Shown piece by piece: positions 3,228 through 59,583 of a DNA stretch of 64,000 bases. Origin of the DNA: Macrostomum lignano. Lineage: Eukaryota. Both the position numbers and the translations under genes were made by a program. The notes below the pieces were generated by a model. The model was not told the DNA's origin and searched no databases. It worked only from the letters and a program-made list of their open reading frames with translations. Position 1 is the stretch's first letter. Every line of letters begins with the position of its first letter. The stretch spans positions 124,001-188,000 of the forward strand of contig NIVC01001557.1 in assembly GCA_002269645.1 (NCBI GenBank). Reading direction: 5' to 3'.

Positions 3228-4275
3228 AGATTCTCTATGATCTCCAGGTTTCTATACGACTCTATGGATCTCAATGACCTCAATGATTCTCTATATAACT
3301 TCAATGATTCTCCATGACCTCAATGATTCTCTATGACTTCAATGATTCTCTATGACCTCAATGATTCTCTATGGACCTCAATGATTCTCTATAGACCTCA
3401 ATGATTCTCTATGACCTCAATGATTCTCTATGACCTCAAAGATTCTGTATGACCTCAATGATTCTCTAAAGACCTCAATGATTCTCTAAAGACCTCAATG
3501 ATTCTATATGACCTCACTGATTCTCTATGACCTCAATGATTCTCTATAGACCTCAATGATTCTCTATGACCTCAATGATTCTCTATGACCTCAATAATTC
3601 TCTTTGACTTCACTGATTCTCGATAGACCTCAATGATTCTCTATAGACCTCAATGACTGTTGATGACCTCAATGATTCTCTATGACCTCAATGATTCTCT
3701 ATGACCTCAATGATTCTCTATGACCTCAATGATTCTCTATAACTTCAATGATTCTCTATGACCTCAATGATTCTCTATGACTTCAATGATTCTCTATGAC
3801 CTCACTGATTCTCTATGACTTCAATGATTCTCTATGACCTCACTGATTCTCTATAACTGCAATGATTCTCAATGACCTCAATGATTCTCTATGACCTCAA
3901 TGATTCTCTATGACCTCAATGATTCTCTATGAACTCAATGATTCTCTATGACCTCAATGATTCTCTATGACCTCAATGATTCTCTATGACCTCAAGGATT
4001 CTTTAAGATCTCGATGATTCTCTAATACCTCAATGACTGTTGATGACCTCAATGATTCTCTATGACCTCAATGATTCTCTATGAGCTCAAGGATTCTCTA
4101 AGACCTCAATGATTCTCTATGACTTCACTGATTCTCTATGACTTCACTGATTCTCTGACTTCAATTATTCTCTGTGACTTCACTGATTCTCTATGACCTC
4201 AATGATTCTCCATTAGCTTAATGATTATCTATGACCTCGATGATTTTCTATGCCCTCAATGATTCTCTATGACCT
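3228..4275. repeat. 19-21-bp minisatellite (GACCTCAATGATTCTCTAT)n
   Basis: Direct reading. Confidence 0.97.
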
Positions 4276-6126: not shown

Positions 6127-7435
6127 GTAGGCTATAGATTAGCAATCCATTCTATTCCTTAATCTTCATGTAGGCTATAGATTAGCAATCCATTCTATTC
6201 CTTGATCTTCATGTAGGCTATAGATTAGCAATCCATTCTATTCCTTGATCTTCATGTAGGCTATAGATTAGCAATCCATTCTATTCCTTGATCTTCATGT
6301 AGGCTATAGATTAGCAATCCATTCTATTCCTTAATCTTCATGTAGGCTATAGATTAGCAATCCATTCTATTCCTTGATCTTCATGTAGGCTATAGATTAG
6401 CAATCCATTCTATTCCTTGATCTTCATGTAGGCTATAGATTAGCAATCCATTCTATTCCTTGATCTTCATGTAGGCTATAGATTAGCAATCCATTCTATT
6501 CCTTGATCTTCATGTAGGCTATAGATTAGCAATCCATTCTATTCCTTAATCTTCATGTAGGCTATAGATTAGCAATCCATTCTATTCGTTAATCTTCATG
6601 TAGGTTATAGATTAGCAATCCATTCTATTCCTTGATCTTCATGTAGGCTATAGATTAGCAATCCATCTATTCCTTAATATTCATGTAGGCTATAGATTAG
6701 CAATCCATTCTATTCGTTAATCTTCATGTAGGCTATAGATTAGCAATCCATTCTATTCCTTAATCTTCATGTAGGCTATAGATTAGCAATCCATTCTATT
6801 CCTTAATCTTCATGTAGGCTATAGATTAGCAATCCATTCTATTCCTTGATCTTCATGTAGGCTATAGATTAGCAATCCATTCTATTCCTTGATCTTCATG
6901 TAGGCTATAGATTAGCAATCCATTCTATTCCTTGATCTTCATGTAGGCTATAGATTAGCAATCCATTCTATTCCTTAATCTTCATGTAGGCTATAGATTA
7001 GCAATCCATCTATTCCTTGATCTTCATGTAGGCTATAGATTAGCAATCCATTCTATTCCTTGATCTTCATGTAGGCTATAGATTAGCAATCCATTCTATT
7101 CCTTGATCTTCATGTAGGCTATAGATTAGCAATCCATCTACTCCTTGATCTTCATGTAGGCTATAGATTAGCAATCCATCTATTCCTTGATCTTCATGTA
7201 GGCTATAGATTAGCAATCCATCTATTCCTTGATCTTCATGTAGGCTATAGATTAGCAATCCATCTATTCCTTAATCTTCATGTAGGCTATAGATTAGCAA
7301 TCCATCTATTCCTTGATCTTCATGTAGGCTATAGATTAGCAATCCATCTATTCCTTAATCTTCGTGTAGGCTATAGATTAGCAATCCATCTATTCCTTGA
7401 TCTTCATGTAGGCTATAGATTAGCAATCCATTATA
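6127..7435. repeat. 42/43-bp minisatellite (GTAGGCTATAGATTAGCAATCCATTCTATTCCTTGATCTTCAT)n, ~30 copies
   Basis: Period 43 (6127 to 6170); a 42-bp variant dominates the right end. Confidence 0.97.
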
Positions 7436-7606
7436 TCCCATTATGTATGCGGAATAGATTAGCAATCCACTATTTAAAGAAATTAACTATCAAACATTAG
7501 CACTTCATTGAACAGGAACACTATTTCTATATTTAGCTAGTTGTTGGATGTATCAAAGAAGTACACCAAGAACTTTTTATCCTCATCCGCTCCCGCCTAG
7601 CCAGTC

Positions 7607-8214: not shown

Positions 8215-10000
8215 AAAGTGAGAGAGAGGAAAGAAGATAGGAAAAAAGAGAGAAGGGGAGTGAGAAGGAGAGAGAGAGAAGGGGAGAGAGAAGGGAAGAG
8301 AGAAGGGAAGAGAGAAGGGAAGAGAGAAGGGAAGAGAGAAGGGGAGAGAGAAGGAGAGAGAGAGAAGGGGAGAGAGAAGGGAAGAGAGAAGGGAAGAGAG
8401 AAGGGAAGAGAGAAGGGAAGAGAGAAGGGGAGAGAGAAGGGGAGAGAGAAGGGGAGAGAGAAGGGGAGAGAGAAGGGGAGAGAGAAGGGAAGAGAGAAGG
8501 GGAGAGAGAAGGGGAGAGAGAAGGGGAGAGAGAAGGGAAGAGAGAAGGGGAGAGAGAAGGGGAGAGAGAAGGGAAGAGAGAAGGGGAGAGAGAAGGGAAG
8601 AGAGAAGGGAAGAGAAGGGGAGAGAGAAGGGGAGAGAGAAGGGGAGAGAGAGAAGGGAAGAGAGAAGGGAAGAGAGAAGGGAAGAGAGAAGGGGAGAGAG
8701 AAGGAGAGAGAGAAGGGAAGAGAGAAGGGAAGAGAGAAGTGGAGTGAGAAGGAGAGAGAGAGAAGGGGAGAGAGAAGGGAAGAGAGAAGGGGAGAGAGAA
8801 GGGAAGAGAGAAGGGAAGAGAGAAGGGGAGAGAGAAGGGAAGAGAGAAGGGGAGAGAGAAGGGAAGAGAGAAGGGAAGAGAGAAGGGAAGAGAGAAGGGA
8901 AGAGAGAAGGGAAGAGAGAAGGGAGAGAGAAGGGAAGAGAGAAGGGAAGAGAGAAGGGAAGAGAGAAGGGAGAGAGAAGGGAAGAGAGAAGGGGAGAGAG
9001 AAGGGAGAGAGAAGGGGAGAGAGAAGGGAAGAGAGAAGGGGAGAGAGAAGGGAAGAGAGAAGGGGAGAGAGAAGGGAAGAGAGAAGGGGAGAGAGAAGGG
9101 GAGAGAGAAGGGGAGAGAGAAGGGGAGAGAGAAGGGGAGAGAGAAGGGGAGAGAGAAGGGAAGAGAGAAGGGAAGAGAAGGGGAGAGAGAAGGGAAGAGA
9201 GAAGGGAAGAGAAGGGGAGAGAGAAGGGGAGAGAGAAGGGAAGAGAGAAGGGAAGAGAGAAGGGAAGAGAGAAGGGAAGAGAGAAGGGAAGAGAGAAGGG
9301 GAGAGAGAAGGGAAGAGAGAAGGGAAGAGAGAAGGGAAGAGAGAAGGGGAGAGAGAAGGGAAGAGAGAAGGGGAGAGAGAAGGGGAGAGAGAAGGGAAGA
9401 GAGAAGGGGAGAGAGAAGGGAAGAGAGAAGGGGAGAGAGAAGGGGAGAGAGAAGGGGAGAGAGAAGGGAAGAGAGAAGGGGAGAGAGAAGGGAAGAGAGA
9501 AGGGAAGAGAAGGGGAGAGAGAAGGGAAGAGAGAAGGGAAGAGAGAAGGAGAGAGAGAAGGAGAGAGAGAAGGGAAGAGAGAAGTGGAGTGAGAAGGAGA
9601 GAGAAAGAAGGGGAGAGAGAAGGGGAGAGAGAAGGGAAGAGAGAAGTGGAGTGAGAAGGAGAGAGAGAAGGGGAGAGAGAAGGGAAGAGAGAAGGGGAGA
9701 GAGAAGGGAAGAGAGAAGGGGAGAGAGAAGGAGAGAGAGAAGGGGAGAGAGAAGGGAAGAGAGAAGTGGAGTGAGAAGGAGAGAGAGAGAAGGGGAGAGA
9801 GAAGGGAAGAGAGAAGGGGAGAGAGAAGGGGAGAGAGAAGGGGAGAGAGAAGGGAAGAGAGAAGGGGAGAGAGAAGGGGAGAGAGAAGGGAAGAGAGAAG
9901 GGAAGAGAGAAGGGAAGAGAGAAGGGAAGAGAGAAGGGAAGAGAGAAGGGAAGAGAGAAGGGGAGAGAGAAGGGAAGAGAGAAGGGAAGACGGAATGGGA
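8215..10000. repeat. 12-bp purine minisatellite (AGAGAGAAGGGR)n in RGS intron 1
   Basis: Direct reading; source of the 280-680 aa low-complexity ORFs. Confidence 0.97.
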
Positions 10001-10746
10001 GAGAGAAGAGAAGAGAAGGGGAGATGGGGAGCGAGGGGGAGAGGAGAGAGTCGAACAAAGAGAAAGGTGAGGTGTTTCAGTTGACACATTAGTTGGAAAG
10101 GAGGTCAGAAGGAGCCTGAAATCCGCAGAATTTCCCATGCAGGAACGCGGTGACTGCAGTGTGAGAGTGGACCAGAGAAGGCTCAAACAGGGAAACCTGA
10201 GCTGCTCATCCCAAACGGGGATTTAATCCCGCGGTTCCCGCTGCCCGTTCCCCATCGAGAAATTTCTGCTTTGCGCTTCGCCTTTCAGGCTGACAGAATT
10301 GGCCCTGCCAGCCATATCTGCTCAGGCCCTGCTCACCTCTCCATTCCCCTCTCAGCCTGTCCCCCGAGTGCTCACTTAATCCGCGCCGCTGAAATCTGGG
10401 ATCGGCGAGATGCGCCGTCACTGGCTGCTGCTTCCGCTGCCCGACCCCCCGGCGCGCGGGGATTGAATAGAGAATGGGGAGTGGGCGGTTCCGCCTGAGC
10501 ACTGATTTCCCAGTCCTTGCCGTCCCATTCAAGTACCCCACCCGCCCCCTGTCTTCGGCCATTGGTCTCGCATTTGCGCTCGGGTAATAAGGATTTGCCC
10601 GGAGGCTTCTGTCTGTGAACTGCAGGGCTCAGAGAGAGAGGGGCTCTTCTTTAGCGGAAAGGCTTTTGAGCTCAGGACTGAGCAGCCGCATAGGTGAGAC
10701 AGAGTGGGAACAGTCCTGACAGCATGACTTTCTGCTGCGCTTCCAG

Positions 10747-10854: not shown

Positions 10855-11348
<494 letters not shown>

Positions 11349-11896: not shown

Positions 11897-12555
11897 AGAG
11901 AGGGAACTCCGGTAGAGAAATGGAGGGAATTCCGGTAGAGAAATGGAGGGAATTCCGGTAGATAAATGGAGGGAATTCCGGTAGAGAAATGGAGGGAATT
12001 CCGGTAGAGAAATGGGGGAATTCCGGTAGAGAAATGGAGGGAATTCCAGGAGAGAAATGGAGAGAATTCCAGTAGATAAATGAAGGGAATTCCAGGAGAG
12101 AAATGGAGGGAATTCCGGTAGAGAAATGGAGGGAATTCCAGGAGAGAAATGGAGAGAATTCCGGTAGAGAAAGGGAGGGAATTCCAGGAGAGAAATGGAG
12201 GGAATTCCGGTAGAGAAATGAAGGGAACTCCGGTAGATAAATGGAGGGAATTCTAGGAGAGAAATGGAGGGAATTCCGGGAGAGAAATGGAGGGAAGTCC
12301 GGTAGAGAAATGGGGGAATTCCGGTAGAGAAATGGAGGGAATTCCGGTAGAGAAATGGAGGGAATTCCGGGAGAGAGATGGAGGGAATTCCGGTAGAGAA
12401 ATGGGGGGAACTCCGGTAGATAAATGGAGGGAATTCTGGGAGAGAAATGGAGGGAATTCCGGGAGAGAAATGGAGGGAATTCCGGTAGAGAAATGGAGGG
12501 AATTCCGGTAGAGAAATGGAGGGAATTCTGGGAGAGAAATGGAGGGAATTCCGGT
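11897..12555. repeat. 23-bp minisatellite (GGAGGGAATTCCGGTAGAGAAAT)n in RGS intron 3
   Basis: Direct reading. Confidence 0.95.
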
Positions 12556-13214
12556 ATAGTTTCCTGTCTCTCCGTGGCCAGTTGCAATTAAAGAAAAGTT
12601 TTTTACAATACATGTCGGTAGACAGGCCGCTGAGGCAGTACCAGTCTACTCGGCATCTGCATGGTTAAAGCCTTTGTAAAAGCCCCCCCCCCCCGAGAAT
12701 GAAATCTCATATTTCGTCTACCTGCAGGCCTCTCCGCCTGACTGGCTTTAATTATTGTTGGATTGTAATGCGATACGCAGCTATGAGCCGCGATCAGCTT
12801 GAGGGCCGTTTATGCCATCTCATAAATCAATCAGTGAGATCCGCTCCTGCCTCGCATCCGTCATGGATTTCCTTACATTTCTAGTTATCTGGATTGGGAA
12901 ACAGTTCCCGATTTTGCAGCCCCGACTCCGTCTAAAGTGCACCCATGGCCCAGCCAACCACGCCCCGAAAAATTCGACTAATTTTCACAACAACTCCTCC
13001 CTGAGTGGCGGGCGGGCCCCTTGACAACTGTCCATTCTTGACCGCCTTTGTGCATTTCCCATGGCGTACTGAGTCCTAGCGGGGGGCATCAGCTCTGGCT
13101 TGAACTCGCTGCACTCTTGCTGACTTCCTTCTCCTCCTTCAGTCTCTCTCCCTTCATCTCGGTCAGTCTCCTTTCTTCTCCATCTCTCACTTCCTTCTCT
13201 CCTTTTATTTAAGT

Positions 13215-13780
13215 CTCTCTCTCCCTCCGTCTCCGTCTCCGTCTCTCTCCCTTCATCTCCGTCTCTCTCCCTTCATCTCCATCTCTCTCCCTTAATCTCC
13301 GTCTCTCTCCCTTCATCTCTGTCTCTCTCCCTTCATCTCCGTCTCTCTCCCTTCATCTCCGTCTCTCTCCCTTCATCTCCATCTCTCTCCCTTAATCTCC
13401 GTCTCTCTCTCCCTGTCCCTTCATCTCCGTCTCTCTCCCTTCATCTCTGTCTCTCTCCCTTCATCTCCGTCTCTCTCCCTTCATCTCCGTCTCTCTCCCT
13501 TCATCTCCGTCTCTCTCCCTTCATCTCTGTCTCTCTCCCTTCATCTCCGTCTCTCTCCCTTCATCTCCGTCTCTCTCCCTTCATCTCCGTCTCTCTCCCT
13601 TCATCTCCGTCTCTCTCCCTTCATCTCTGTCTCTCTCCCTTCATCTCCGTCTCTCTCCCTTCATCTCCGTCTCTCTCCCTTCATCTCCGTCTCTCTCCCT
13701 TCATCTCCGTCTCTCTCCCTTCATCTCCGTCTCTCTCCCTTCATCTCCGTCTCTCTCCCTTCATCTCCGTCTCTCTCCAC
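13215..13780. repeat. 20-bp minisatellite (CTCTCTCCCTTCATCTCCGT)n in RGS intron 3
   Basis: Direct reading. Confidence 0.95.
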
Positions 13781-18740: not shown

Positions 18741-20367
18741 ATCGCCGGCTAAATTTCGGGAACAGCTGAAATAGGTACAAGCAATTTTACAGGCTCAGCC
18801 GATAGTTTATTGACAATATTCGCTAATTGCCTACTTTAAGTACGAGCTAGAAAACTGCGCTCGTGAACTCAACAGTAGAATAATACCATTTAGATTGTAA
18901 TCAGGTGATTTTCCTGCACTTTTGGTTGGATTGTTAGGCCAGTCGCGCAGATGTAAGCCGACACCCAGGGAGCAGATCGCTAATGCACTGGTGCGAGGAC
19001 TCTGCACTAACTGAAGTCAGGTTGGGACACCTTGATCGGAATGTTTTGCAGAAATTGTCTAAAGTTTAAATAAATTCGCTATACGTAGTTTAAGAAAGCT
19101 TAATTTGAAAGTTGCATAGTTGCGTACGAGTATGAGAAATATATTGTTACACAATCCCACACCCGGACTGCACATGTATCCTATCTACATTTGCCCACTT
19201 TTTATGTCATACTATACTTTTAAATCTACTTACCATTACATGATAGTTTTTTGTCTTGCCGGGAGGCTTAACACTTTTGGGGCTATGGCATAAAACTAAA
19301 TGGGTATGGATGCCCACCAGCTTTGCTCAAGTCTGTATTTCTATCTATTTTTAAGAAGCAAGAAATCATAACTGTCGAAAGGAAAGTACTATACACGGGA
19401 CTGTGTTCATCTCATGCGATAGCAGCGATGCACTTTTAAACACACTGGCCTCTAAAGACCCTAATGAGTGTGTAAGGAGGGTCTTTAGTCAACGAGAGCA
19501 ATACAATGTAGGCACCATGCGAAACAGAAGATGGTTTTAACGGGTTAGGGTTAGCGCTCACGCAGTACAGATCTCTCCGCAGTACACTTCTTTCCGTGTT
19601 GTTGTTTAGGCCACCATCAACCCCCCTCAACCCTACTGTGTCACGCGTTCACAGGCTGCTGGCTTGGCCTTTAAACCTAAGCTTGGGTATTGTCCTTTAG
19701 GCATTGAATTCGGCTTGTCTAGAGCAGCTGGTCTGCTTAGATATTTAGTCGAGACGAGTTAGAGGGGGCCTTGTTTTTAGCGCTCCGATGTAAGCGCTTT
19801 TCCAGTGCTTGCACAGACACCCTGACTAATACAAAAATAAAAAATTAATAATCCTAATCTTAAATTCGACAAATTCCCAAACCTTAGAAACAATAAAATC
19901 ACTCTGAAAAGTCAGACTGAAAACTAAATCTCTAAAATCAGTAGTAAATGAAAATAAGACAGACTGGGGGGCACACAACTGGTGCATGCGGTATTTCTGA
20001 TGATAGAACAGCCGATATCGGGCGCGACGGTAAAAGGTGCTGCATACAAATACTCGGAGCTTTAGGACATCTTTAGAATTCAGAGGATACTGTTATATAT
20101 TGTTAATAACCGATTTTTTATTGAAAAGTTCCACACAGAAATTAAAATCTGCCAAAATATCGACCCCATGACTCCCTCGATTCCCTAATTTGTTCCGCCT
20201 CTGCTCTTCCTGGAGAGAGAGGGAGAGAGGGAGAGAGAGGGGGAGAGAGAGGGGGGAGAGAGGGAGAGAGAGGAGAGAGAGAGGGGAGAGAGAAAGAGAG
20301 AGAGGAAGGCAACTCCAATCTCAGGCACTGACACGGTAGAAAGGACTGAAGAAAGTCAGTTAAGTTG

Positions 20368-20413
20368 ACTTGCCGATATTTCGAAATTATTATATTTCTT
20401 CGTCAGGGCAAGT
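20368..20413 (-). ncRNA. Minimal type I hammerhead ribozyme, copy 1
   Basis: Minus strand reads ACTTGCC-CTGACGA-A-GAAAT-ataata-ATTTC-GAAA-TATC-GGCAAGT: 7-bp stem I, CUGANGA/GAAA core, 5-bp stem II, palindromic AUAU stem III, AUC cleavage triplet. Confidence 0.8.
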
Positions 20414-20525
20414 GAAAAGTGAGAAGAGAGAGGGGGGAAGAGAGGGAGAGAGAGAAGGAGAAAGAGAGAGAAAGAGAGAGACAGAGAGGGAGAGAGAGGA
20501 GAGAAAGAGAGAGAGAGGGAGAGAA

Positions 20526-20584
<59 letters not shown>

Positions 20585-20624
20585 GAGAAAGAGAGAGAAA
20601 GAGAGAGACAGAGAGGGAGAGAGG

Positions 20625-20694
<70 letters not shown>

Positions 20695-20771
20695 GAGAGA
20701 GGAGGGCGCCTCCAATCTCAGGCACGGACGCGGTACATGTAAAAAGGACAAACAAGTCAAGATGATTTAAG

Positions 20772-20812
20772 TTGCCGATATTTCGAATTAGGTAAATTCT
20801 TCGTCAGGGCAA
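20772..20812 (-). ncRNA. Minimal type I hammerhead ribozyme, copy 2
   Basis: TTGCC-CTGACGA-A-GAATT-tacct-AATTC-GAAA-TATC-GGCAA; stem II shows a compensatory change relative to copy 1. Confidence 0.8.
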
Positions 20813-21905
20813 ATGCAAAGTAGCGACAAGTGGTGTTGTAAAAGTTATTAAATAGGCGGGTTAGAGGGAGAGAGAGTAGGCAGGTAGATAGAGAGCGTAC
20901 GGTATGTACACTTGGTGTGAGTCGATAAAACACTATTAGAGTTGAAAATGCAAAATAAAAAACAGTGCACAAATAAAGTGAACCGCACGTGGGCTGCAGC
21001 GATCCTACACACGAAATAAATAATGGAATAGTGCGACTGCACCGGTGTCTAAAAAGGGGAAAGAGTGACTCTAAACACTTTACAAAATTGACCTCAATAA
21101 ATAAATAAGCAGTAAATCAATAAATAAATAAATAAGGTGAAAGGCCCTCAAAAACTTAAAAAAGAGCAATTGTACGATAAGCAAAAGAGTAAAAGTAAAA
21201 AGTGTAATAAAAAGTACAGGGTGTCAAGAAACAATAGAAATGTTGATGCAGAATAAATGCTGAGAATATACAAAAGCTGTGCTTGGGCTAGCGATGAGAA
21301 TAAAAAAATTTTCTAAGAAAGGAGCAATAAAAGGCTTGGTAGGTATCGGCACGGTCTGACAAAGGTAAGTAGTAGGGAAAGTGAAGTAAAAAATCAAAAA
21401 GAAAAAAAAAATTCAATCAGTGTGGACTCCAGTCGACTGGGACAGAGCAGCTGCCGGAGGTTCCGCCTTTGGTGTAGGCGGGCAGCAGCCGGCGCCTCGC
21501 AGCACCGGGCCACGCGGTCCTTCACCGCGGCCACCAGGGCGTCCGACCTCGCACAATGGGGCAGGATCAGCGGGATGGCCGGGTTGTGCAGCGTGCCGGC
21601 AAGCTCGTTGACGCCGTGCGGGGTTTGAGTCTTTACACCTCGATGAGCTTGGCCTCGTGGCGCTGCCGCCGCTCGTTCGCTCTGGGTCCCGTGCCGTCAC
21701 GAGACCAGATGTGAAAAGTCCGCCAGACTGTGGCCATCACTGGTGAATGGCGGGCCACCGGAGTGTCACGGGCGTGCCGGATGTCGCCGATGTGCGCCAG
21801 CATGCGGCCGCGGATGCTGTTGGCGGTCTCGAGAGAGAGAGAGAGAGAGAGAGGGGAGAGAGAGAGAGAAAGAGAGAGAAAGAGAGAGACAGAGAGGGAG
21901 AGAGG

Positions 21906-21977
<72 letters not shown>

Positions 21978-22005
21978 GAGTGAAAGAGAGAGAAAGAGAG
22001 AGAGG

Positions 22006-22036
<31 letters not shown>

Positions 22037-22056
22037 GGAGAGAGAGAGAGAGAGGG

Positions 22057-22118
<62 letters not shown>

Positions 22119-22208
22119 GAGAGATAAAAAGAGAGAGAGAGAGAAAGAGAGAGAGAGGGAGAGAGAAAGAGAGAGAGAAAGAGAGAGAAAGAGAGAGAAA
22201 GAGAGAGA

Positions 22209-22356
<148 letters not shown>

Positions 22357-22396
22357 GAGAGACAGAGAGGGAGAGAGGGAGAGAAAGAGAGAGAGA

Positions 22397-22432
<36 letters not shown>

Positions 22433-22476
22433 AGAGAGAGAGAGTGAAAGAGAGAGAAAGAGAGAGAGGGAGAGAA

Positions 22477-22517
<41 letters not shown>

Positions 22518-22526
22518 GGGAGAGAG

Positions 22527-22557
<31 letters not shown>

Positions 22558-22658
22558 GAGAGGGGAGAGAGAGAGATAAAGAGAGAGAGAGAGAAAGAGA
22601 GAGAGAGGGAGAGAGAAAGAGAGAGAGAAAGAGAGAGAAAGAGAGAGAAAGAGAGAGA

Positions 22659-22818
<160 letters not shown>

Positions 22819-23642
22819 GAGAGAGAGCTTACCTTTATGAAGTTTCTGCAGCCAGCTTGTAGCATCTCAAACAGGAACAAAAAAAGATATTGTCTCAAAG
22901 AGAAGAATAGAACGCACGGGCATACAGAAAACATCCAGAACTGAATATCAAGTTTTTAAAATTTTGCTGAATGATTAAAAACTGAAAAATAGAAATCATT
23001 TAGATAATAGCTCGTAATTATAATTAACGATCTTGAGTATCTAAGGGCACTGGGATTAATGTAAGATTATTGACAAAAAATTTTGTTGACTGATGACGCT
23101 CAGTTTTTGATTGAGTATAGATCAGAGAAAAAAATCTGCGAAAGAAAACACACAGCCATACAAAAATTGATAAACACGGAGGCTTCCATATCTTAATAAT
23201 TAAAACAGTTTGATCAACGTTTTACTAATTTCCTTAAAAAAACAAAAAAAGTGTTGCAACTTCAAAAAATATTTCATCTGTTTGTTCCGTTTTAACAAAA
23301 CTGACCGACCAAAGTGTTTCATTTCATCATCTTGATCTTCATCTTGAAGCTGCTCAACTGCTCAGGCCTCGCTTGTCTGCGCGGTGGGCGATTTGAGTCG
23401 TTGTAGCATTTCAGGAATGAGAGTCGGAATTTATGATGTGGAAATTGGGATTTTTGATGGGGAAATTGGGTTTTATGATGGGGAAATTGGGAATTTATGA
23501 TGGGGAAATTTGGAATTTATGATGGGGAAATTGGGGCTGAATCTCGACATTCACCGACATAGAGGATGTCAGACATTTGGGTTCATGAGGATATCAGAAT
23601 CAGGCATCTCAGATGATACTGCATTGTAAAAGAGTCGCAAAC

Positions 23643-27463: not shown

Positions 27464-28300
27464 ATGGCGCATTTCATCTCCCTGCCACCGCCTGAGCAAT
27501 TCAGCACAAACACTGATCAACAAAACATCTCTAAACGGTGGACCGTGTGGGCCGATCGCTTCCGCGACTTTATCGACGCATCCGGAATTACGGCCGAAAC
27601 TCAGAAGTGCAAACTGCTGTCCTACACGGCAGGCAGGGAGATCGCCCAAATCGTCAAGGACCTGCCGGACGACAAGAAAGACAGCTTCAGCAACTTGCTG
27701 GCCGCTCTTACAGCACACTTTGACGAACGCAAGAGTATCGTCTTCGCCCGCTACCAGTTCAGACTTTGCGTGCAGCAGACTGGAGAGCCGGTGGACGCCT
27801 GGTACGCTAGACTAAAGGCAGCTGCTGAAGCCTGCGAGTTCTCCACCCTGAAGGATTCTCTCATTAGAAACCAGATCGTCGCAACTTGCTGCTCCGACAA
27901 GCTCAGACGGCGACTGCTCCAGGAGAGCAACATTGCATTGAACGATGCTATCAGACAGGCTCGCGCACTAGAAGCCGCGGAAGAGCAGGCCACAGCCATG
28001 GAGAGCAGCAGCAGCAGCATCGCGGCCATTCACAAGTCGGCATCAAACCAGCGCAGAGACCAGCCACAGCCAAACGGCCAGAGGCCGACATTCGCCTCCA
28101 ACACCACCTGCTACCGCTGTGGAGAGCGCGGCCACAGCAGCTGCGGCGCCGCGAAAGGGAAGACCTGCTCGTGATGCGGCAAGCCCAACCACCTCGCAAA
28201 GGCCTGCAGGCAACGCCGGCAGCAGAACTCTTCCAGCATCAACGTGGTTGCAAACAACACGGACGGCAGCTCAATCTATGTCTCGCCCGACACCTCACCG
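27464..28300 (+). pseudogene. gag with two zinc knuckles, interrupted by TGA at 28172-28174
   Basis: LIRNQIVATCCSDKLRRRLLQE capsid-like motif; CYRCGERGHSSC and CS*CGKPNHLAKAC knuckles. Confidence 0.88.
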
Positions 28301-31300
28301 AAGAAGCATTCACGATACAGACGCCGGCTGCGTCGTCAGGGCAAAGATCGGCCAACATGCGCCTGCAGATCGAAGGGAAAGAATTCAACGTGCTGGTCGA
28401 CAGCGGCGCGAGCTTCCAACACCTGCAGCACGTTTCCCTGCGTGGCGCCACCCAGCAGATCTTCAGCTATGGCTCATCAACACCGCTGCAAGTGCTTGGC
28501 CTTGCCGATCTAGCTCTCCGCACCGACTCAGATGAGCTACAAGCCCCGTTCTTCATCACCAAGGGCAGTGGCATCACTCTGCTTGGGCGCAACACCGCCT
28601 TCGACATGGGAATCCTACACATCCAGCAGCCGGCCCGACAGATCAACGCTGTGAAACCTCGTGACAGCGCCGAATCCTCGACATTGAAGAAGCTACTCGC
28701 CAAACACGATCAAAATCTGGACAACGACCTACAACCGGACTTACGGTTAGGCAACATACTTCGCGAGTTCCAGCCAGTTTTTGAAGGCCTTGGCCGGGTC
28801 AAGGACGTTGAAGTAGACGTTCGGCTGCGCCCCGAAGCCGTGCCAGTGTGCCATCCACCGTCCAGGATACCCGTCCACCAGCGACAGGCCGTCATCGACG
28901 AGCTACAGCTCCTGCTAGATGAAGGCATCATCGAGCGCGTGCATGGGCCTTCACCGTGGGTCTCCCGGATGGTTGTCGTGCCAAAGGAGTCTGGCGGCAT
29001 TCGCATTTGCCAGGATCTTCGCAATGTCAACTCTTTTGCCGTGCCGGAAAAGCAGCCGATCCCGACCTTCGAGGAAATCACTGACGACATGGCGGGCTCG
29101 ACCGTATTTAGCGAGTTAGACATCACGAAAGCCTTTCACCAGATCCCCGTGAGCCCGGAGTCCCGCCACCTCTTCACCTTCAGCACCCCGCTGGGCCTCA
29201 TGCGACTCACCAGGCTCAGCATGGGTTTCACGAACGCGTCGGAGGTGCTGCAGAGAGTCATGACGGGAGTCCTCAGCGGCCTAAATGGTGTCAGGTGGGC
29301 CCACGACGATATCACGATCTTCGCGCGCAACATGGCCGAACACAACAGCCGTTTGAAGGCGTGCCTCCAGCGCCTCAGAGACCACGGGATCACCCTTAAC
29401 CCCGATAAGTGCCGTCTCGCCCAACCTTCCATCGAATTTCTCGGAATGCGCATCAGCGCCAGCGGCGTCCAGCCAACAGAGGAGAAAATAAAGGCGCTCA
29501 AGGCCTTCAAGGTGCCCACAAACACATCGGAGCTACGCTCATTCCTTGGGCTGGCAACCTACCTGTCAAGGTGCATTCCTAACTTCTCCGACCTGACTCA
29601 ACCGATGCGAGAGCTGCTCAAAAAGGGCCACGTCTGAAGCTGGACGGACAAGCAGCAAGAAGCCTTCAAACAAACTAGGGCCGCCATTTGTTCGGAAAAC
29701 ATTCTGGCCTTCTTCGACGTCGACATGGAGACGGAGGTGCACGTGGACGCCTCGCCGGTCGGCCTCGGCGCTATCCTGAGCCAGACGGACAAGAGAGGAG
29801 TCCGCAGACCTATCGCCTTCGCCAGCAGATCGCTGACGGCCGTCGAGCAACGGTATGCTCAGATCGAGCGGGAGGCACTTGCTGTGAAGTTTGGCTGCCT
29901 CCGATTCGAGCACTACCTCAGCGGCTGCCCAAGGTTCACCATCGTGACAGACCACCGCCCGCTGGTACCACTCTTCCAGCCCGGGTCTCGGCCGCCGCCC
30001 AGAATCGAGCGTATGGCACTGAGAGTGCAGCACCTCAGCTTCAACATCATCTACCAGCCCGGGCCGCAAAACCCAGCCGACGTGCTCAGCAGGCAGCCGC
30101 AAATGCAGACAACCGACAACCCCGGCGAAGTGCTCGACCGGCAGTTCATCAACGCCATCGCCCTCGGATCGACGCCACAAGGTCTCAGCTTCGAGTCAAT
30201 CAAGCAGGCGGCCAGGCTCGACGGTGTCACTCAGGCAGCCATCTCGGCACTACAGACCAACCAGTGGACCAGCAACGACCATGAGCTCCGTGCGCTTGCC
30301 TGCATCCGGCAAGAACTGTCGGCCCACGACGGCGTTCTGCTTCGCGGTTCTTCGATCATCGTGCCAGCGAGTCTTCGGCGAGTAGTACTCCAGCTGGCGC
30401 ACAAAGGCCATCAGTGCTGGCGGAAAACTCTAGACCGGCTTCAAACGAAGGTGTGGTGGCCAGGCATGAGGGGCGAATGCCAGGTTTTCGTGCAAAGCTG
30501 CCTCGCCTGCCAAGCAACGTCGCCTAAAACGACCAATCCGCCACCTCTTCAGCCCTCGCAGCTCCCCGACGGAGCCTGGCTCGTCCTCGGCATGGACTTC
30601 TACGGTTCGGTACAGGACAAAATGCTGCTAGTGACAACAGACCTTTACTCAAAGTTTCCAGAGATCAACATCGTCAGTTCGACCTCCGCAGAGGCTGTGC
30701 TGCCACACCTGAAAACTCTCTTCAGCAGGTACGGCATCCCACAAGAAATCATCAGCGACAACGGCCCACCCTTCAACTCTGCAGAGTTCCACAGCTTTCT
30801 CGCTGAGCACGGCGTCAAGCACCGCCGCATCTGCCCGCTGCACCCGGAGGCCAACGGAGCGACCGAGCGCGTCAACCGATGCGTCAACAAGGTCGTCAGG
30901 GCGGCCATCGCCGAAGGCCGCAGCTGGCGCAGTGCCCTAGACGACTGGCTCCTCGCATACCGCGTCACTCCTCATTCGGCAACCGGAGTCGCGCCGGCCG
31001 AATTGCTAATGGGCCGGACCTTCAACGACACCGTCCCGTCGGCGCGCCCCTCGCAGCCCGTGTACCATCATCGCACACAGCTGACCCAGCGACACTCGGC
31101 CTACACCAGAGCGATGGCCAGGGACTTCAACCGTTCCCGGAGGGCCAAGGCCTGCAGCGTGAGGCCGGGTACTGCGGTGCTACGGAGGCGGAATCAGCGA
31201 ACGAAGACTCAGACACCCTTCGAGGTCGAGCCCTGGACCGTCGTGGACAGGCGGGGTGACTCCTACGTGCTACAACAGGGCGACCGCACCTGCACTCGAC

Positions 31301-31437
31301 ACCTGACGCACATCCGCCCGCTGGTGGCGGCAGAGGGCGCTGCGGCGAACGCGGAACCGACGCCGCCAGAATGCGGCATTGCCCAGCGGCCGCATCCCCG
31401 CGCGGCCAAAGACAAGCCAATCAGCTACAAGGACTGA
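28300..31437 (+). pseudogene. pol (protease, RT, RNase H, integrase) with in-frame TGA at 29635-29637
   Basis: LVDSGAS protease; PWVSRMVVVPK...RICQDLRNVN, LSMGFTNA and AHDD RT motifs; VDASPVGLGA and YAQIEREALAV RNase H; H-H-C-C finger, GMDF, SDNGPPF and ATERVN integrase. Confidence 0.93.
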
Positions 31438-43654: not shown

Positions 43655-43925
43655 TGATTACCAAACTAAAAATCCCATCCGATCCCCATTCCCAAAAATC
43701 CCATCCGATCCCCATTCCCAAAAATCCCATCCGATCCTCATCCCCTAAAATCCCATCCGATCCTCATTCCCTAAAATCCTATACGCTCCTCATCCCCTAT
43801 AATCCCATCCGATCCTCATCGCCTAAAATCCCACCCGATCTCTATCCCCTAAAATCCCATCCGATCCTCATCGCCTAAAATCCCACCCGATCTCTATCCC
43901 CGATAAGTCCATCTGATCCCCGATC
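43655..43925. repeat. ~26-bp minisatellite (AAAATCCCATCCGATCCTCATCCCCT) in PHF20 intron 2
   Basis: Direct reading. Confidence 0.9.
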
Positions 43926-43982
43926 CCCAGGAATCCCATTTTCGGAAGCATTCGGACGAGCAACGCAACCAAAGAGCCTCAC

Positions 43983-45924
43983 CTTCTGAACAATAGCGTA
44001 GAGCTCCATAACCTGACGCACAACGTCCATCATTGGCGAAGTCTGCGCGCCCGAGCTGGGCTGGCGCAGCCATTTGTGATGCCAGACCCGCCTAGTGGAT
44101 TTGAACTCCTTCCTGGGGTGCAGGCAGAAGCTGCACACATAGTACAGATCCGGTATGCTGCGCAAGTCAACGGCTTTGGAGGCGCAGCGGGCGTGCTGGA
44201 AGGCGCGGCAGACCTCGCACTGGATCATGTCGTCTTCGCCCGAGCGGCCGCACTGGCAGTGAACAACCCGCCGCTTGTCTGGCGCGACTATCGAAGCCTC
44301 CGCTGCGGCGGCGGCGGCTGCAGCGGTAGCAGCAGCAGCCGATGACTGCAACGAGGAACTGGACGATTTATGATGCGCCTTGCTGACCGTGGCCGGCTGG
44401 GACGCGAGCTCGGAGTCGTGCTGATCGCGACTAGACGACATCAGAGATTCCAGATCCTCGGCGGTGGCAGCCTCGCTACGCCTGGACGAAGAGGCGTTGT
44501 CGCCGGCTGCCGCAGCCTTGGACGAGGACGCAGCGCGGCCGGAACCTTTGGGCCGATGGTAGAACCTGATGTGGTCGGACAGCAGCTTCTCCTTGCGGAA
44601 GCTCTTGCCGCACTGGTCGCATTCGAATGTCTCGATGGTCCAGTGGGCGGGCACAGTCGGCTCAGTTGAAGTCTTCCGCTTGCCGCTGCCGCTGCCGACG
44701 CTTGTGGCGCTGCTGTTGCTGCGGCCGAGGCCGCCCGAGCCGAAGAACGAGCGCCGCCTGTCGGCCGTCCAAGCCGACGATCCGGGCGTCGAAGTGGCGG
44801 TGGCGGCGGCGGCAACAGCGGCGGCGGAGGTCGGAGCGGCGGGGCTGCACACGGAAGCTGACCGATCCAGCGATGGAGTTGACAGCTTGGGCAGCCGGAC
44901 TCGCATTTTCGGCAGTCGCTGCTCGTGCTGAGAACCCTGCTGCTGCGGCGGCGGCGGCGGCGGCGGCGGCAGGAGTTCTGCTGAGGCATCGGCAGCAGAC
45001 TCCACAGTCTCCTCAGCGCTCATCATAGCGGTGGTCATGGCGGTGGTGGCGGCCGAACTGCCAGCCTCGGCCACAACATTCTGATCGCTGCTGAAGCTGT
45101 TCTGCTCCAGCTCAGGGTCCAGCCGAGCTCGCTTTGCCAGCGGTTCGTGCTCAGGCTCAACAGCGGACGGTTTCGGCAGGGTGCTGGCCTCCTCACTGGC
45201 TGGCAGCTCAGCGGGCGGAGAGTCTGCCGGTCGCTTCCTACTGAGCTGGTCCGGCAGTTGCTTGGGCGAAACCGAAGCATCCTCTTGGCACTCTTCAAAC
45301 GTCAGCGAGTATTCAGACTGCTGCTCTTCTGGCTTGATTGCAGCTGCCGCGGCCGCTTCCTCTGCTTCTTTTTCTTCTTTTAGTAGCAAATTTGTCGGAA
45401 TTTTCAACGTCATCTTTAATGGCGGCAGCCGGCCCTGCTTCGGCTCTGGAGCCTCCTGAGGAGGAGTCGGCGAAGGCGGTGGCGGGGACTGCGGCGCTGC
45501 CTGCGACTTGGCCGGCTGTGGAGCGGCGGTTCGCCGACGGCTTCGTCGGGTCTCGCTGGCAGCATTGAAGGACTGGGAAAGCTTCTGCTGCTGCTGCTTC
45601 TGTTGCTGCTTTTGCTTCTGTTGCTGTTGCTGTGATGAAGAAGCGCCGCCAGCATCACTGGATGAGGCTGAGGCCAGCTCAGCTGACAGCAGCGACTCCG
45701 GGCAGGTGGAGTTGAGCATCAGCTGGTCATCCGCGTCGTCGCCACCGCCGCCACCGCCGCCGCCGACGCCGCCGCCGCGTTTCTCCAGCCGTCGGCGCCG
45801 GGAGTTCTCCTGAATGCGGCGTACCATGGGGTCATAGTTGATCTCGCTGGGCCCCGTGGCCGGCCACTGGGCGGCGAAGATCGCCTCGGCCTCGGCTGCG
45901 TCGTACGGCTTCAGCTGGGAGGCC
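43983..45924 (-). CDS. PHF20: PHF20-like, exon 2 (low-complexity region, C2H2 finger, PHD finger)
   Basis: FECDQCGKSFRKEKLLSDHIRFYH C2H2; VVHCQC...MIQCEVC..FQHARC...YVCSFC PHD. cccgcag| and AAG|gtgagg. Confidence 0.92.
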
Positions 45925-45957
45925 CTGCGGGGTGGCGACAATGGGGCGAAGTTTCGA

Positions 45958-46660
45958 TTAGTGAGTTGGTCATGCTGTGAGTTGGTCATGCTGTGAGTTG
46001 GTCATGCTGAGTTGGTCATGCTGTGAATTGGTCATGCTGTGAATTGGTCATGCTGACTATAATTGGTCATACTATGAGTTGGTCATGCTGACTATAATTG
46101 GTCATACTATGAGTTGGTCATGCTGACTATAATTGGTCATACTATGAGGTAGTTATGCCGTGAGTTGGTCATGCCCTGAATTGGTCATGCTATGAGTTGG
46201 TCATGCTGACTATAATTGGTCATGATGTGAGTTGGTCATGCTGTGAGTTGGTCATGCTATGAATTGGTCATGATGTGAGTTGGTCATTGTGTGAGTTGGT
46301 CATGCTGAGTTTGGTCATGGTGTGAATTGGCCACGCTGAGTTTGGTCATGGTGTGAATTGGCCACGCTGAGTTTGGTCATGGTGTGAATTGGCCACGCTG
46401 AGTTTGGTCATGGTGTGAATTGGCCATGCTGAGTTTGGTCATGGTGTGAATTGGTCATGCTATGAATTGGTCATGATGTGAGTTGGTCATGCTATGAATT
46501 GGTCATGCTGTGAGTTGGTCATGCTGTGAGTTGGTCATGCCCTGAATTGGTCATGCTATGAGTTGGTCATGCTATGAATTGGTCATGATGTGAGTTGGTC
46601 ATGCTGAGTTTGGTCATGGTGTGAATTGGCCATGCTGAGTTTGGTCATAGTGTGCAAAAT
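45958..46660. repeat. 16-20-bp minisatellite (GAGTTGGTCATGCTGT) in PHF20 intron 1
   Basis: Direct reading, with higher-order sub-blocks. Confidence 0.95.
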
Positions 46661-47133: not shown

Positions 47134-47995
<862 letters not shown>

Positions 47996-48607
47996 GCCTC
48001 CCTCTCTCCCTGTCTGTGTTTTTTATTGCAATTCCTGTTAATGTTGGCGAACATCAATGCTGCCGGCATGTCCCAGATGAAGCGCCCCAGCTGTGAATTT
48101 TCAAACTGCTTCACACGCTCAGGACTGCTTGCTAGAGTTGTCGTAATCGCAATATACTAATAACAGTACTAGCAATATGGCATTCTAATAATATAAATAC
48201 GAGAAACTCTACACTGCAAGCAGTGCAAGTTCAAGCAATAAATATAAGATGCAGACAGAAAAAAGCTATAATAGGCTGCACGCCCACACATAGCAACTAA
48301 ATAGACAAGATGGAGACAGACTAGCTGGAGCGTATTGTCAACAATTGAAACTATAATCTACAAAGCATGCGCCTAAGCAATGGAAAAGCATAAAATATTT
48401 GCGCGGGCTTATTTCTCCTAGTCATAAAAAGGATTCGAGTGCAAGGGGGCGAGGCAGTCATGCGTTCTTGCGTAGCCTGTCGTCCATAGCTTAGCGACTG
48501 ATCATTAATGAGACCCAGCCAGTGAAATCAACACGACTGACTGCTTTGATGCCCTTCTAATGATTCCCTGCGAGGATCGGATGGTTCCCCTGACTGACTG
48601 ACTGGAT

Positions 48608-59435: not shown

Positions 59436-59583
59436 ACGTCAGGGCTTCTAAAAGGAAAATTAATTTGGTTTAGCAAAAGCAGAAGATCGATTTCTCTCAC
59501 AAGACCCGGCTGCTTCCGGCACGAACCCAGCAACACAGAGGATATGCATGGGGGGAGGGAAATTAATTTCCCAAATGACAAAC

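What the first reader, a model, noticed from the sequence alone, without database searches (positions are those of the whole stretch)
20368..20812. Pair of minimal hammerhead ribozymes with covarying stem II, separated by (TC)n
Seen: on the minus strand two copies, ~400 nt apart, of TTGCC-CTGACGA-A-G[stem II]C-GAAA-TATC-GGCAA. Stem I is 7 bp in copy 1 and 5 bp in copy 2. Stem II differs compensatorily (GAAAT/ATTTC vs GAATT/AATTC) with different loops, which is what a structure under selection looks like. Stem III is only the palindrome AUAU. Established: Penelope-like elements carry minimal type I hammerheads with palindromic stem III that cleave as dimers. Inference: the two copies pair in cis to self-cleave after C at 20375 and 20777 and process the element's transcript. 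They lie antisense to nothing and on the same strand as the upstream TMEM59-A transcript, so they could also cut read-through RNA.
Basis: partly seen in the sequence, partly recalled or inferred. Interest (0 to 1): 0.75.

Follow-up and report, generated by a model that had tools for sequence, protein, structure and literature searches.

The report
Relic hammerhead ribozymes of Penelope-like retrotransposons
The two small self-cleaving-RNA motifs are real, but they are the known "minimal hammerheads" left at the tails of two dead, separately inserted Penelope-like retrotransposon fragments in a (TC)n microsatellite of the flatworm Macrostomum lignano, not a purpose-built pair.

Summary
Two minimal type I hammerhead (HHR) motifs lie on the minus strand at 20772-20812 (A) and 20368-20413 (B). 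They have intact catalytic cores, an extra A between A9 and G10.1, a G10.1-C11.1 pair, and AUAU in place of helix III. These are the published hallmarks of Penelope-like element (PLE) min-HHRs (PMC4209133).

The window is Macrostomum lignano. HHR-A lies about 0.8 kb downstream of a frameshifted C-terminal remnant of a PLE GIY-YIG endonuclease and about 70 nt from the element's 3' end. HHR-B belongs to a 125-nt 3' stub of the same family. Both abut (TC)n.

A second M. lignano assembly has HHR-B but lacks the 1.13-kb fragment carrying HHR-A. In the window that fragment is flanked by a roughly 150-bp duplication of the target. The two motifs therefore most likely come from independent insertions, not from the two pLTRs of one element or a retrozyme tandem.

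More than 120 metagenome loci carry the same motif, with strong stem II covariation. Nine of them lie just downstream of PLE RT-EN ORFs.

Cis-dimer cleavage and cutting of read-through RNA remain untested inference. This is a new member of a known kind, of low to moderate interest.

The parts
20772..20812 (-). min-HHR copy A. Helix I TTGCC/GGCAA (5 bp); core CUGACGA plus an extra A; helix II GAAUU/AAUUC with loop UACCU; GAAA; AUAU palindrome. Predicted cleavage is 3' of C at 20777.
   Evidence: 50.5 bits with CM R1
20368..20413 (-). min-HHR copy B. Helix I ACTTGCC/GGCAAGT (7 bp); the same core plus the extra A; helix II GAAAU/AUUUC with loop AUAAUA. Predicted cleavage is 3' of C at 20375.
   Evidence: 51.9 bits with CM R1; present identically in L123 at 13541-13590
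21633..21830 (-). Decayed C-terminal remnant of a PLE GIY-YIG endonuclease. It starts at the 'ET' of YVGET, so it is 5'-truncated inside the GIY-YIG motif. The homologous reading continues past 21633 in another frame, to about 21560, and needs at least 3 frame changes overall.
   Evidence: Translations. The stitched 93 aa give E = 2.6e-40 and 84% identity to P0001, which by its accession series is probably a chimeric M. lignano gene model, and which carries PLE RT+EN sequence. More distant hits carry Pfam GIY-YIG or RVT_1 in the right places.
20813..21632 (-). AT-rich 3' untranslated region of the longer PLE fragment, between the endonuclease remnant and HHR-A.
20702..20771 (-). 3' terminal 'tail' of fragment A (70 nt). 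It ends in the conserved block TACCGCGTCCGTGCCTGAGATTGGAGGCGCCCTCC, directly abutting (TC)n.
20297..20367 (-). 3' terminal tail of fragment B, with the same conserved distal block (GTGCCTGAGATTGGAG is identical in both copies), abutting (TC)n.
20414..20424 (-). About 10 nt of element sequence upstream of HHR-B (ACTTTTCAC, homologous to ACTTTGCAT in copy A). This marks the 5' truncation point of the 125-nt fragment B.
21831..22827 (-). (TC)n microsatellite upstream of fragment A. It is target DNA. Roughly 21833-21982 is one copy of the duplicated target segment.
20421..20701 (-). (TC)n between the two HHR-bearing fragments. It is host microsatellite. Roughly 20552-20701 is the second copy of the approximately 150-bp duplicated target segment.
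20211..20296 (-). (TC)n-rich tract downstream of fragment B, ending at unique sequence.

Best explanation
The locus holds two relic 3' ends of one family of Penelope-like retrotransposons (C-terminal GIY-YIG endonuclease type) in the flatworm Macrostomum lignano. Each carries the family's minimal type I hammerhead about 70 nt from the element's 3' terminus.

Shown:
- The motifs carry the complete hammerhead core and helices I and II.
- HHR-A belongs to a 1.13-kb 5'-truncated copy: endonuclease remnant, 0.8-kb 3'UTR, HHR, then tail.
- HHR-B belongs to a 125-nt stub of a diverged copy.
- Both are embedded in one long (TC)n microsatellite.
- Another assembly of the same locus has only B. In the window, A is flanked by a roughly 150-bp duplication of the target. 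The two therefore most likely arrived in separate insertion events.

Inferred:
- In the active parent element, the HHR lies in the terminal repeat region. When two copies are on one RNA (the partial tandems typical of PLEs, or read-through), they pair through the AUAU palindrome. That forms a shared 4-bp helix III, and the RNA self-cleaves 3' of C17, trimming unit-length RNA.
- The conserved distal tail (GTGCCUGAGAUUGGAG...CCUCC) is the likelier recognition or priming site for target-primed reverse transcription into (GA)n/(TC)n DNA.
- At this locus the motifs are passengers. Any cleavage of a host read-through transcript, or release of a 402-nt RNA between the two C17 sites, would be incidental and probably inefficient.
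For: - Motif anatomy and non-random occurrence.
- Match to the published min-HHR hallmarks (extra nucleotide between 9 and 10.1, G10.1-C11.1, palindromic 15.2-16.2, location in PLE terminal repeats, many solo copies from truncated PLEs): PMC4209133.
- PLE endonuclease remnant upstream on the same strand.
- Species.
- Related PLE on metagenome contig L001 (58% EN identity). Its min-HHR lies about 330 nt after the ORF stop, has the same extra A and GAAAUAU-H, and has different, compensating helices I and II. A microsatellite follows.
- More than 120 metagenome loci match the 22-nt-anchored pattern. About 2-3 chance matches is my own estimate from an assumed collection size, not a computed value.
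- Stem II paired far above null. Mean 3.9 extra contiguous pairs, against 0.8 for shuffles and 1.4 for swapped halves; 16 distinct stem types.
- Pair counts: 87.4% of cells paired, against 69% when shuffled and 28-49% when slid. Six of 7 stem II pairs show double changes.
- Eight loci from the pattern scan, plus L001, have the HHR on the same strand downstream of a PLE RT-EN ORF.
- A covariance model built without the window's sequences scores A at 50.5 bits and B at 51.9 bits. It also matches flanks that the fishing pattern did not force (UCAnUU, AAGUC).
- Independent insertions and target duplication.
- Between the two copies the HHR is 36/42 identical, with all differences in distal stem II or the loop. 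The tail as a whole is 63% identical, with a conserved distal block.
Against: - No cleavage or expression data exist for this locus.
- Helix III would be only four A-U pairs. My nearest-neighbour estimate makes it roughly neutral to unfavourable, and RNAcofold does not predict it.
- Published min-HHRs cleave poorly in vitro even as dimers (PMC4209133). HHR mutants did not impair in vitro insertion of an Anolis PLE, and no RNA-seq ends mapped to its cleavage site (PMC11167929). The 'processing' role of PLE HHRs in general is therefore unproven.
- Stem II here is short (5 bp) and A/U-rich. The metagenome relatives have 6-7 bp.
- In a fold of the 471-nt two-HHR RNA, the 3' strand of HHR-B's helix I is predicted to pair elsewhere (low ensemble frequency).
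- The absence of fragment A from L123 could in principle be a deletion or an assembly difference rather than an empty site. The flanking target duplication argues for insertion.
- No other M. lignano copies could be surveyed.
Confidence: 0.85

Rival explanations
1. This is a functional cis-acting pair. The two hammerheads are the two terminal-repeat (pLTR) ribozymes of one element. They dimerise on one transcript and excise or process that element's RNA.
For: The copies are in direct orientation, 401 nt apart on one strand, and share the palindrome AUAU. PLEs commonly occur as partial tandems with an HHR in each pLTR (PMC4209133, PMC8557442).
Against: L123 has HHR-B without fragment A, and A has its own flanking target duplication. 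The ORF remnant lies upstream of both HHRs, not between them. The two units are only 63% identical across the tail. The intervening DNA is host (TC)n. The element is 5'-truncated within the endonuclease and frameshifted.
Confidence: 0.05
2. This is a metazoan non-LTR retrozyme. On this reading the locus is a dimer of a roughly 400-nt HHR-containing tandem repeat. Its transcript self-cleaves at both ribozymes and is ligated into a roughly 402-nt circular RNA, which is mobilised in trans by PLEs.
For: The monomer size (about 400 nt) and direct tandem orientation fit the 150-450-bp range of animal retrozymes (PMC7229834). Retrozymes are proposed to derive from PLE pLTRs (bioRxiv 10.64898/2026.07.22.740005).
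Against: The 'monomers' are homologous only over about 125 nt; the rest is microsatellite plus, for A, a further kilobase of PLE sequence. The two were acquired separately. Published retrozymes carry canonical type I HHRs with loop 1-loop 2 contacts and highly self-paired monomers, whereas (UC)n is unstructured. Nothing beyond this dimer was found in the window.
Confidence: 0.05
3. The matches are chance occurrences of hammerhead-like sequence in AT-rich or low-complexity DNA, with no ribozyme ancestry.
For: Rfam hammerhead models give no hit even at E<=10. A third partial match (28317-28348) is clearly chance: it lies inside a Gypsy ORF and scores 11 bits.
Against: Two full matches against 0.04 expected. 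Both are embedded in homologous repeat units next to a PLE endonuclease remnant. The same architecture sits downstream of PLE ORFs in unrelated contigs, with covariation.
Confidence: 0.02

Closest known systems
Minimal hammerhead ribozymes (min-HHRs) of metazoan Penelope-like elements (Cervera & De la Pena 2014, PMC4209133), including those of the flatworm Schistosoma mansoni (Cercyon PLEs)
   Same: - Type I topology with an open helix I of 5-7 bp.
- Complete CUGANGA / GAAA / UH core.
- An unpaired nucleotide between A9 and G10.1, and a G10.1-C11.1 pair.
- No helix III hairpin; positions 15.2-16.2 are palindromic (AUAU), which implies dimeric action.
- Location near the 3' end, in the terminal repeat region, of an RT-GIY-YIG element.
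- Most genomic copies are solo motifs from truncated elements.
   Different: Helix II is 5 bp and A/U-rich here, against 7-8 bp in the S. mansoni families and 6-7 bp in the metagenome relatives. The host (Macrostomum lignano) and this PLE family were not found described in the literature I searched. Both copies sit in a (TC)n microsatellite.
Microsatellite-targeting PLEs (Neptune; Naiad with (TA)n; Chlamys with (CA)n or (C)n) (Craig et al. 2021, PMC8557442)
   Same: The insertions are embedded in a simple-sequence array. The copies are 5'-truncated. A short conserved 3' 'tail' region is present. The related ORF P0011 contains a C-x4-C-x2-C string upstream of the GIY-YIG domain, of the kind hypothesised to mediate microsatellite bias.
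   Different: The target here is (TC)n. A discernible, unusually long (about 150 bp) target duplication is visible because the array carries landmark variants. Naiad and most Chlamys lack canonical HHRs, whereas this family has one. Clade assignment was not tested.
Animal non-LTR retrozymes and newt satellite 2 hammerheads (PMC7229834)
   Same: Type I hammerheads with a weak, palindromic helix III, active only as dimers. Direct repeats a few hundred nt apart. A proposed evolutionary link to PLE terminal repeats.
   Different: Retrozymes are homogeneous multimeric tandem repeats. Their HHRs are canonical, with loop-loop tertiary contacts, and they are expressed as self-paired circRNAs. Here there are two independently inserted PLE ends separated by host microsatellite.

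Membership tests
Hammerhead ribozyme (type I) | Conserved catalytic core: C3-U4-G5-A6-N7-G8-A9, G12-A13-A14, A15.1/U16.1, and H17 not G | tested here: met
   Both copies read CUGACGA ... GAAA-UAU-C.
Hammerhead ribozyme (type I) | Helices I and II flank the core, with 5'/3' ends in helix I | tested here: met
   Helix I is 5 bp (A) and 7 bp (B); helix II is 5 bp in each. Both helices form in the MFE fold of each motif.
Hammerhead ribozyme (type I) | Helix III closing the three-way junction within one molecule | tested here: not met
   Only A15.1-U15.2-A16.2-U16.1 is present, with no hairpin. It could form only between two motifs. RNAcofold does not predict that pairing. Rfam hammerhead models give no hit.
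Hammerhead ribozyme (type I) | Site-specific self-cleavage leaving 2',3'-cyclic phosphate and 5'-OH ends | not testable with these tools
   This needs in vitro transcription and cleavage assays, or RNA end mapping.
PLE min-HHR (Cervera & De la Pena 2014) | [quoted passage not shown] | tested here: met
   All three features are in both copies. The criteria are quoted from PMC4209133.
PLE min-HHR (Cervera & De la Pena 2014) | Consensus families with compensatory changes in the helices | tested here: met
   Within the window there is one pair flip. Among 55 distinct metagenome relatives, 6 of 7 stem II pairs and 2 of 5 stem I pairs show double changes, with 87.4% of cells paired against 69% shuffled. 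Within the M. lignano genome: not testable here.
PLE min-HHR (Cervera & De la Pena 2014) | Location in the terminal repeat or 3' region of an RT + GIY-YIG element | tested here: met
   HHR-A lies 0.8 kb downstream of the endonuclease remnant on the same strand. The same arrangement is seen in L001 and in 8 loci from the pattern scan.
Penelope-like element (intact copy) | A single ORF with PLE-type RT followed by a GIY-YIG endonuclease, flanked by pLTRs from partial tandem insertion | tested here: not met
   Only about 90 aa of the endonuclease C-terminus survives, with frame changes. There is no RT in the fragment. The second HHR unit is an independent stub, not a pLTR. The locus therefore holds PLE fragments, not an element.
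Animal non-LTR retrozyme | Homogeneous tandem monomers (about 150-450 bp), each with a canonical type I HHR with loop 1-loop 2 contacts, expressed as circRNA | tested here: not met
   Homology between the units is limited to about 125 nt. Helix I is open, with no loop 1. The units were acquired separately. circRNA expression is not testable here.

The most novel reading that the evidence does not exclude
Two independent PLE 3'-end insertions into one microsatellite have by accident created a head-to-tail HHR-spacer-HHR unit of 402 nt. If the region is transcribed, for example by read-through from the upstream gene, the two minimal hammerheads could dimerise. They would release a (UC)n-rich RNA with ligatable ends. 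This would be a snapshot of how a non-LTR retrozyme can be born from PLE termini, as the 2026 preprint proposes on phylogenetic grounds. A side aspect: this PLE family may target (TC)n and generate exceptionally long (about 150 bp) target duplications.
Probability: 0.07. Interest if true: 0.55.

Novelty: new member of a known kind. Interest (0 to 1): 0.28.

Why it matters
The finding adds Macrostomum lignano, a regeneration and germline model flatworm, to the hosts of hammerhead-bearing Penelope-like elements. It also gives a clean natural 'filled versus empty site' pair for such an element inside a microsatellite. That pair shows that the hammerhead-bearing 3' end travels with even very short truncated copies, and that the insertion came with a long target duplication.

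This is useful for annotating PLE ends in a repeat-rich genome. It is also useful for the open question of what PLE hammerheads actually do. It does not reveal a new ribozyme class or a new mechanism.

Tried and rejected
- Rfam 15, at gathering score on the whole window and at E<=10 on 19800-21400: no hammerhead hit, only sub-threshold noise (snoU30, TCL6_3, DUF805b).
- A third core-like match at 28331-28344 is chance. It lies antisense inside a Gypsy-type RT ORF, has no stem II or GAAA, and scores 11 bits.
- Pfam on the endonuclease remnant, both in pieces and stitched: no hit.
- The word-indexed protein search with the remnant found nothing. Only the exhaustive HMMER search did.
- A search for more M. 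lignano copies through the protein databases gave just one Logan contig (L124), which ends 29 nt after the ORF stop and so carries no 3'UTR or HHR.
- L002 (PLE ORF P0011) has no HHR within the 620 nt available downstream.
- I tested whether a microsatellite downstream of the HHR is general in the metagenome family. It is not: 9 of 119 downstream, against 12 of 109 in the upstream control.
- The attempt to evaluate the double-hammerhead structure energetically failed, because that structure is not nested.
- The TMEM59 identity of the upstream gene gave only a sub-threshold BSMAP hit, and the database homologue P0044 has no meaningful Pfam hit.

Full report
**1. The observation**

On the minus strand the window reads as follows.
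- Copy A, 20812-20772: TTGCC-CTGACGA-A-GAATT-TACCT-AATTC-GAAA-TATC-GGCAA.
- Copy B, 20413-20368: ACTTGCC-CTGACGA-A-GAAAT-ATAATA-ATTTC-GAAA-TATC-GGCAAGT.

- Helix I is 5 bp in A and 7 bp in B.
- Helix II is 5 bp in both, and its fourth pair is flipped (U-A against A-U).
- The hammerhead core is complete.
- An extra A sits between A9 and G10.1.
- Only the palindrome AUAU stands where helix III should be.
- C17 lies at 20777 and 20375.

The motif is not a chance event. The core pattern matches twice, against 0.04 expected. A relaxed structural descriptor run over both strands of all 64 kb returns only these two sites. Each motif folds into helices I and II as its minimum-energy structure, with z = -2.05 for A and -4.05 for B.

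Rfam's hammerhead models find nothing, even at E<=10. That is expected, because the motif has no helix III hairpin. A third core-like string at 28331 is noise inside a Gypsy-type ORF.

**2. What surrounds the motifs**

Reading the minus strand 5' to 3', the layout is:

| Coordinates | Content |
|---|---|
| 22827-21831 | (TC)n, about 1 kb |
| 21830 to about 21560 | GC-rich coding remnant |
| down to 20813 | AT-rich 3'UTR |
| 20812-20772 | HHR-A |
| 20771-20702 | 70-nt tail |
| 20701-20421 | (TC)n |
| 20424-20414 | about 10 nt of element sequence |
| 20413-20368 | HHR-B |
| 20367-20297 | about 70-nt tail |
| 20296-20211 | (TC)n, followed by unique DNA |

The coding remnant translates, with at least three frame changes, as ETANSIRGRMLAHIGDIRHARDTPVARH / FTSDGHSLADF.. 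/ ..RANERRQRHEAKLIEV / KTQTPHGVNELAG...

An exhaustive HMMER search links it to PLE proteins.
- The best hit is P0001 (E = 2.6e-40, 84% identity). Its accession series sits beside a Macrostomum lignano UniRef entry, so it is probably a chimeric M. lignano gene model.
- In P0001 the match continues upstream into ...AVYAVICRQCDHTVYVGET. That is a GIY-YIG motif with the PLE-type cysteines, and it is preceded by PLE reverse-transcriptase sequence.
- More distant hits carry Pfam GIY-YIG over the aligned region (P0011, P0029). P0006 carries RVT_1 upstream of it.

The remnant is therefore the C-terminal end of a PLE endonuclease, 5'-truncated inside the YVG-ET motif.

The window itself is M. lignano. 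A neighbouring ORF is 99% identical to BOX15_Mlig017900g2.

**3. Relation between the two copies**

The homologous unit runs from about 10 nt upstream of helix I to the (TC)n junction.
- Within the hammerhead, 36 of 42 positions are identical. All six differences lie in distal helix II or its loop.
- The tail as a whole is only 63% identical.
- Its last roughly 35 nt are well conserved, and GTGCCTGAGATTGGAG is identical in both copies.

The two copies are thus diverged members of one family. The hammerhead and a terminal block are the conserved modules.

**4. The two motifs most likely come from separate insertions**

Locus L123 is contig NIVC01001601.1 of assembly GCA_002269645.1. It covers the same locus at 98-99.8% identity.

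In L123 the (TC)n array runs uninterrupted from 12415 to 13535 and is followed directly by HHR-B and its tail. The 1.13-kb fragment 21830-20702, which holds the endonuclease remnant, the 3'UTR, HHR-A and its tail, is absent.

The flanks align as follows.
- The window's upstream flank aligns to L123 up to position 13405.
- The downstream flank starts aligning at L123 13256.
- About 150 bp of the array is therefore present once in L123 and on both sides of the insertion in the window.
- That segment includes a distinctive ...CCCTCTCTGTCTCTC... landmark, so the overlap is not a low-complexity misalignment.

This is the signature of an insertion with a long target duplication, not of an assembly collapse. 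It follows that HHR-A and HHR-B are not the two pLTR ribozymes of one element, and they are not monomers of an amplified tandem repeat. They are two separate arrivals in the same microsatellite.

**5. Family evidence from elsewhere**

*A related PLE.* Metagenome contig L001 encodes a relative with 58% endonuclease identity. It carries GAAAAGCC-CTGAAGA-A-GGATT..GATCC-GAAA-TA-TT-GGCTTTTT about 330 nt after its ORF stop. The architecture is the same, including the extra A. Helices I and II differ but compensate. About 80 nt further on a (CAGT/CATT)n microsatellite begins.

My rough expectation by chance was 2-3, estimated from an assumed collection size rather than computed.

*Pairing of the unconstrained helix II*.
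- It is paired far above null expectation: 3.9 contiguous pairs beyond G-C, against 0.8 for shuffled and 1.4 for swapped sequences.
- There are 16 distinct stem types.
- On a 55-sequence alignment, 87.4% of cells pair, against 69% when shuffled and 28-49% when slid.
- Six of 7 helix II pairs show changes on both sides.

*Position relative to PLE ORFs.* In eight of these loci, and in L001, the motif lies on the same strand a few hundred nt downstream of a PLE RT-EN ORF.

*An independent model.* A covariance model built only from the metagenome sequences scores HHR-B at 51.9 bits and HHR-A at 50.5 bits. The core identity is partly built in by how the sequences were fished. The model also matches flanks that the pattern did not constrain (UCAnUU upstream, AAGUC downstream).

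*Microsatellites.* Association with a downstream microsatellite is not general in the metagenome set (9 of 119, against 12 of 109 in the control). It appears specific to the M. lignano and L001 lineage.

**6. How it most likely works**

The anatomy matches, point for point, the 'min-HHR' of metazoan PLEs described by Cervera and De la Pena (PMC4209133):
- a conserved G10.1-C11.1 pair;
- palindromic 15.2-16.2;
- location in PLE terminal repeats;
- mostly solo genomic copies from truncated elements.

The published model is that two motifs on one RNA form a shared helix III and cleave 3' of H17, trimming multimeric or read-through PLE transcripts.

That model is inference here, and it is weakly supported in general.
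- Min-HHRs cleave poorly in vitro even as dimers (PMC4209133).
- For an Anolis PLE, ribozyme-dead mutants inserted normally in vitro, and no RNA-seq ends mapped to the cleavage site (PMC11167929).
- A 4-bp all-A-U helix III is thermodynamically marginal by my own estimate. RNAcofold does not predict it.
- In the 471-nt two-HHR RNA, HHR-B's helix I is predicted to have a competing pairing.

I therefore read the locus as relics. The hammerheads were maintained in the master elements and are passengers here.

The conserved terminal block next to (TC)n is the better candidate for the reverse-transcription recognition or priming site. This is by analogy with the internal RT start sites and 'tail' of the Anolis element, and it is inference.

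**7. The read-through idea**

A gene does lie upstream on the same strand. Its exons match P0044 at 25217-24984 and 24143-23631, and a paralogue lies at 39797-38587.

Its TMEM59 identity rests only on a sub-threshold BSMAP hit (E = 0.017). The database homologue has no meaningful Pfam hit.

HHR-A is about 2.8 kb beyond the last matched coding segment. Nothing here shows transcription across it.

**8. Comparison and novelty**

- As a kind of object this is already known: PLE min-HHRs, including those of flatworms.
- As an instance it is new. I found no paper describing PLE hammerheads in M. lignano.
- Microsatellite insertion bias is known for Neptune, Naiad and Chlamys PLEs (PMC8557442). The (TC)n target and the visible roughly 150-bp target duplication are minor new details.
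- The locus is not a retrozyme (PMC7229834). The units share only about 125 nt, they lack loop-loop contacts, and they were acquired separately.

**9. Verdict**

| Question | Answer |
|---|---|
| Observation | confirmed |
| Novelty | new member of a known kind |
| Interest | about 0.28 |

Noticed in passing
window about 21833-21982 and about 20552-20701; L123 13256-13405: The 1.13-kb PLE fragment is flanked by two copies of a roughly 150-bp stretch of the (TC)n array that occurs once in the other assembly. The stretch is recognisable by a G-containing landmark. This is an unusually long target duplication for a retrotransposon insertion.
   Followed up: yes
window 20313-20328 and 20710-20725 (minus strand): A 16-nt block, GTGCCTGAGATTGGAG, is identical in both element tails just before the (TC)n junction, although the rest of the tail has diverged. 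It may be the 3' recognition or priming element of this PLE family.
   Followed up: partly
L001 3413-3458 and 3540-3875: A related PLE (58% endonuclease identity) on a metagenome contig has the same min-HHR architecture, with compensating helices. About 80 nt after the motif a (CAGT/CATT)n microsatellite begins. Microsatellite association may therefore be a trait of this PLE lineage.
   Followed up: partly
loci L003-L122 (metagenome contigs, mostly Ga0126336, Ga0126343, Ga0099818-21 and OFE*): One abundant metagenome HHR family (TCAGTTGCC-CTGACGAAG-...-CGAAATATC-GGCAAGTC) shares with the M. lignano HHR-B not only the core but also helix I and flanking bases that the search pattern did not force. 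This suggests a PLE/HHR lineage conserved across distant hosts. The host organisms of these samples could not be identified here.
   Followed up: partly
window 27464-31437 (+): A Gypsy-type LTR retrotransposon interior: gag-like (PNMA, zf-CCHC), RVT_1, RNase H and integrase ORFs. The region is 99.8% identical to L123.
   Followed up: partly
window 25217-23631 (-) and 39797-38587 (-): Two paralogous copies of the gene homologous to BOX15_Mlig017900g2 lie about 14.5 kb apart on the same strand. TMEM59/BSMAP similarity is only sub-threshold.
   Followed up: partly
whole window; for example 644-1287, 3229-4275, 6127-7436, 8247-10024, 10855-11348, 47139-47996, 58396-59437: The density of tandem repeats is extraordinary: 36 TRF rows with score 300 or more, with periods from 2 to 144. 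Many of the long 'ORFs' in the window are artefacts of these arrays.
   Followed up: no
L123 5338-9897 and 14061-16495, against window about 25983/25590 and 19894: The other assembly carries about 4.5 kb and about 2.4 kb of sequence that is absent from the window at these points. The locus therefore differs by several large indels besides the PLE fragment.
   Followed up: no
window 43875-45989 (-): A GC-rich 704-aa ORF with weak, sub-threshold PHD-finger and C2H2 zinc-finger hits. It could be a host gene or a transposon-derived ORF.
   Followed up: no
window 20752-20760 against 20366-20374 (minus strand): In the MFE fold of the two-HHR transcript, UUGACUUGU in tail A pairs with GCAAGUCAA (the 3' strand of HHR-B helix I). 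This would compete with folding of HHR-B. The ensemble frequency is low, so the prediction is weak.
   Followed up: no
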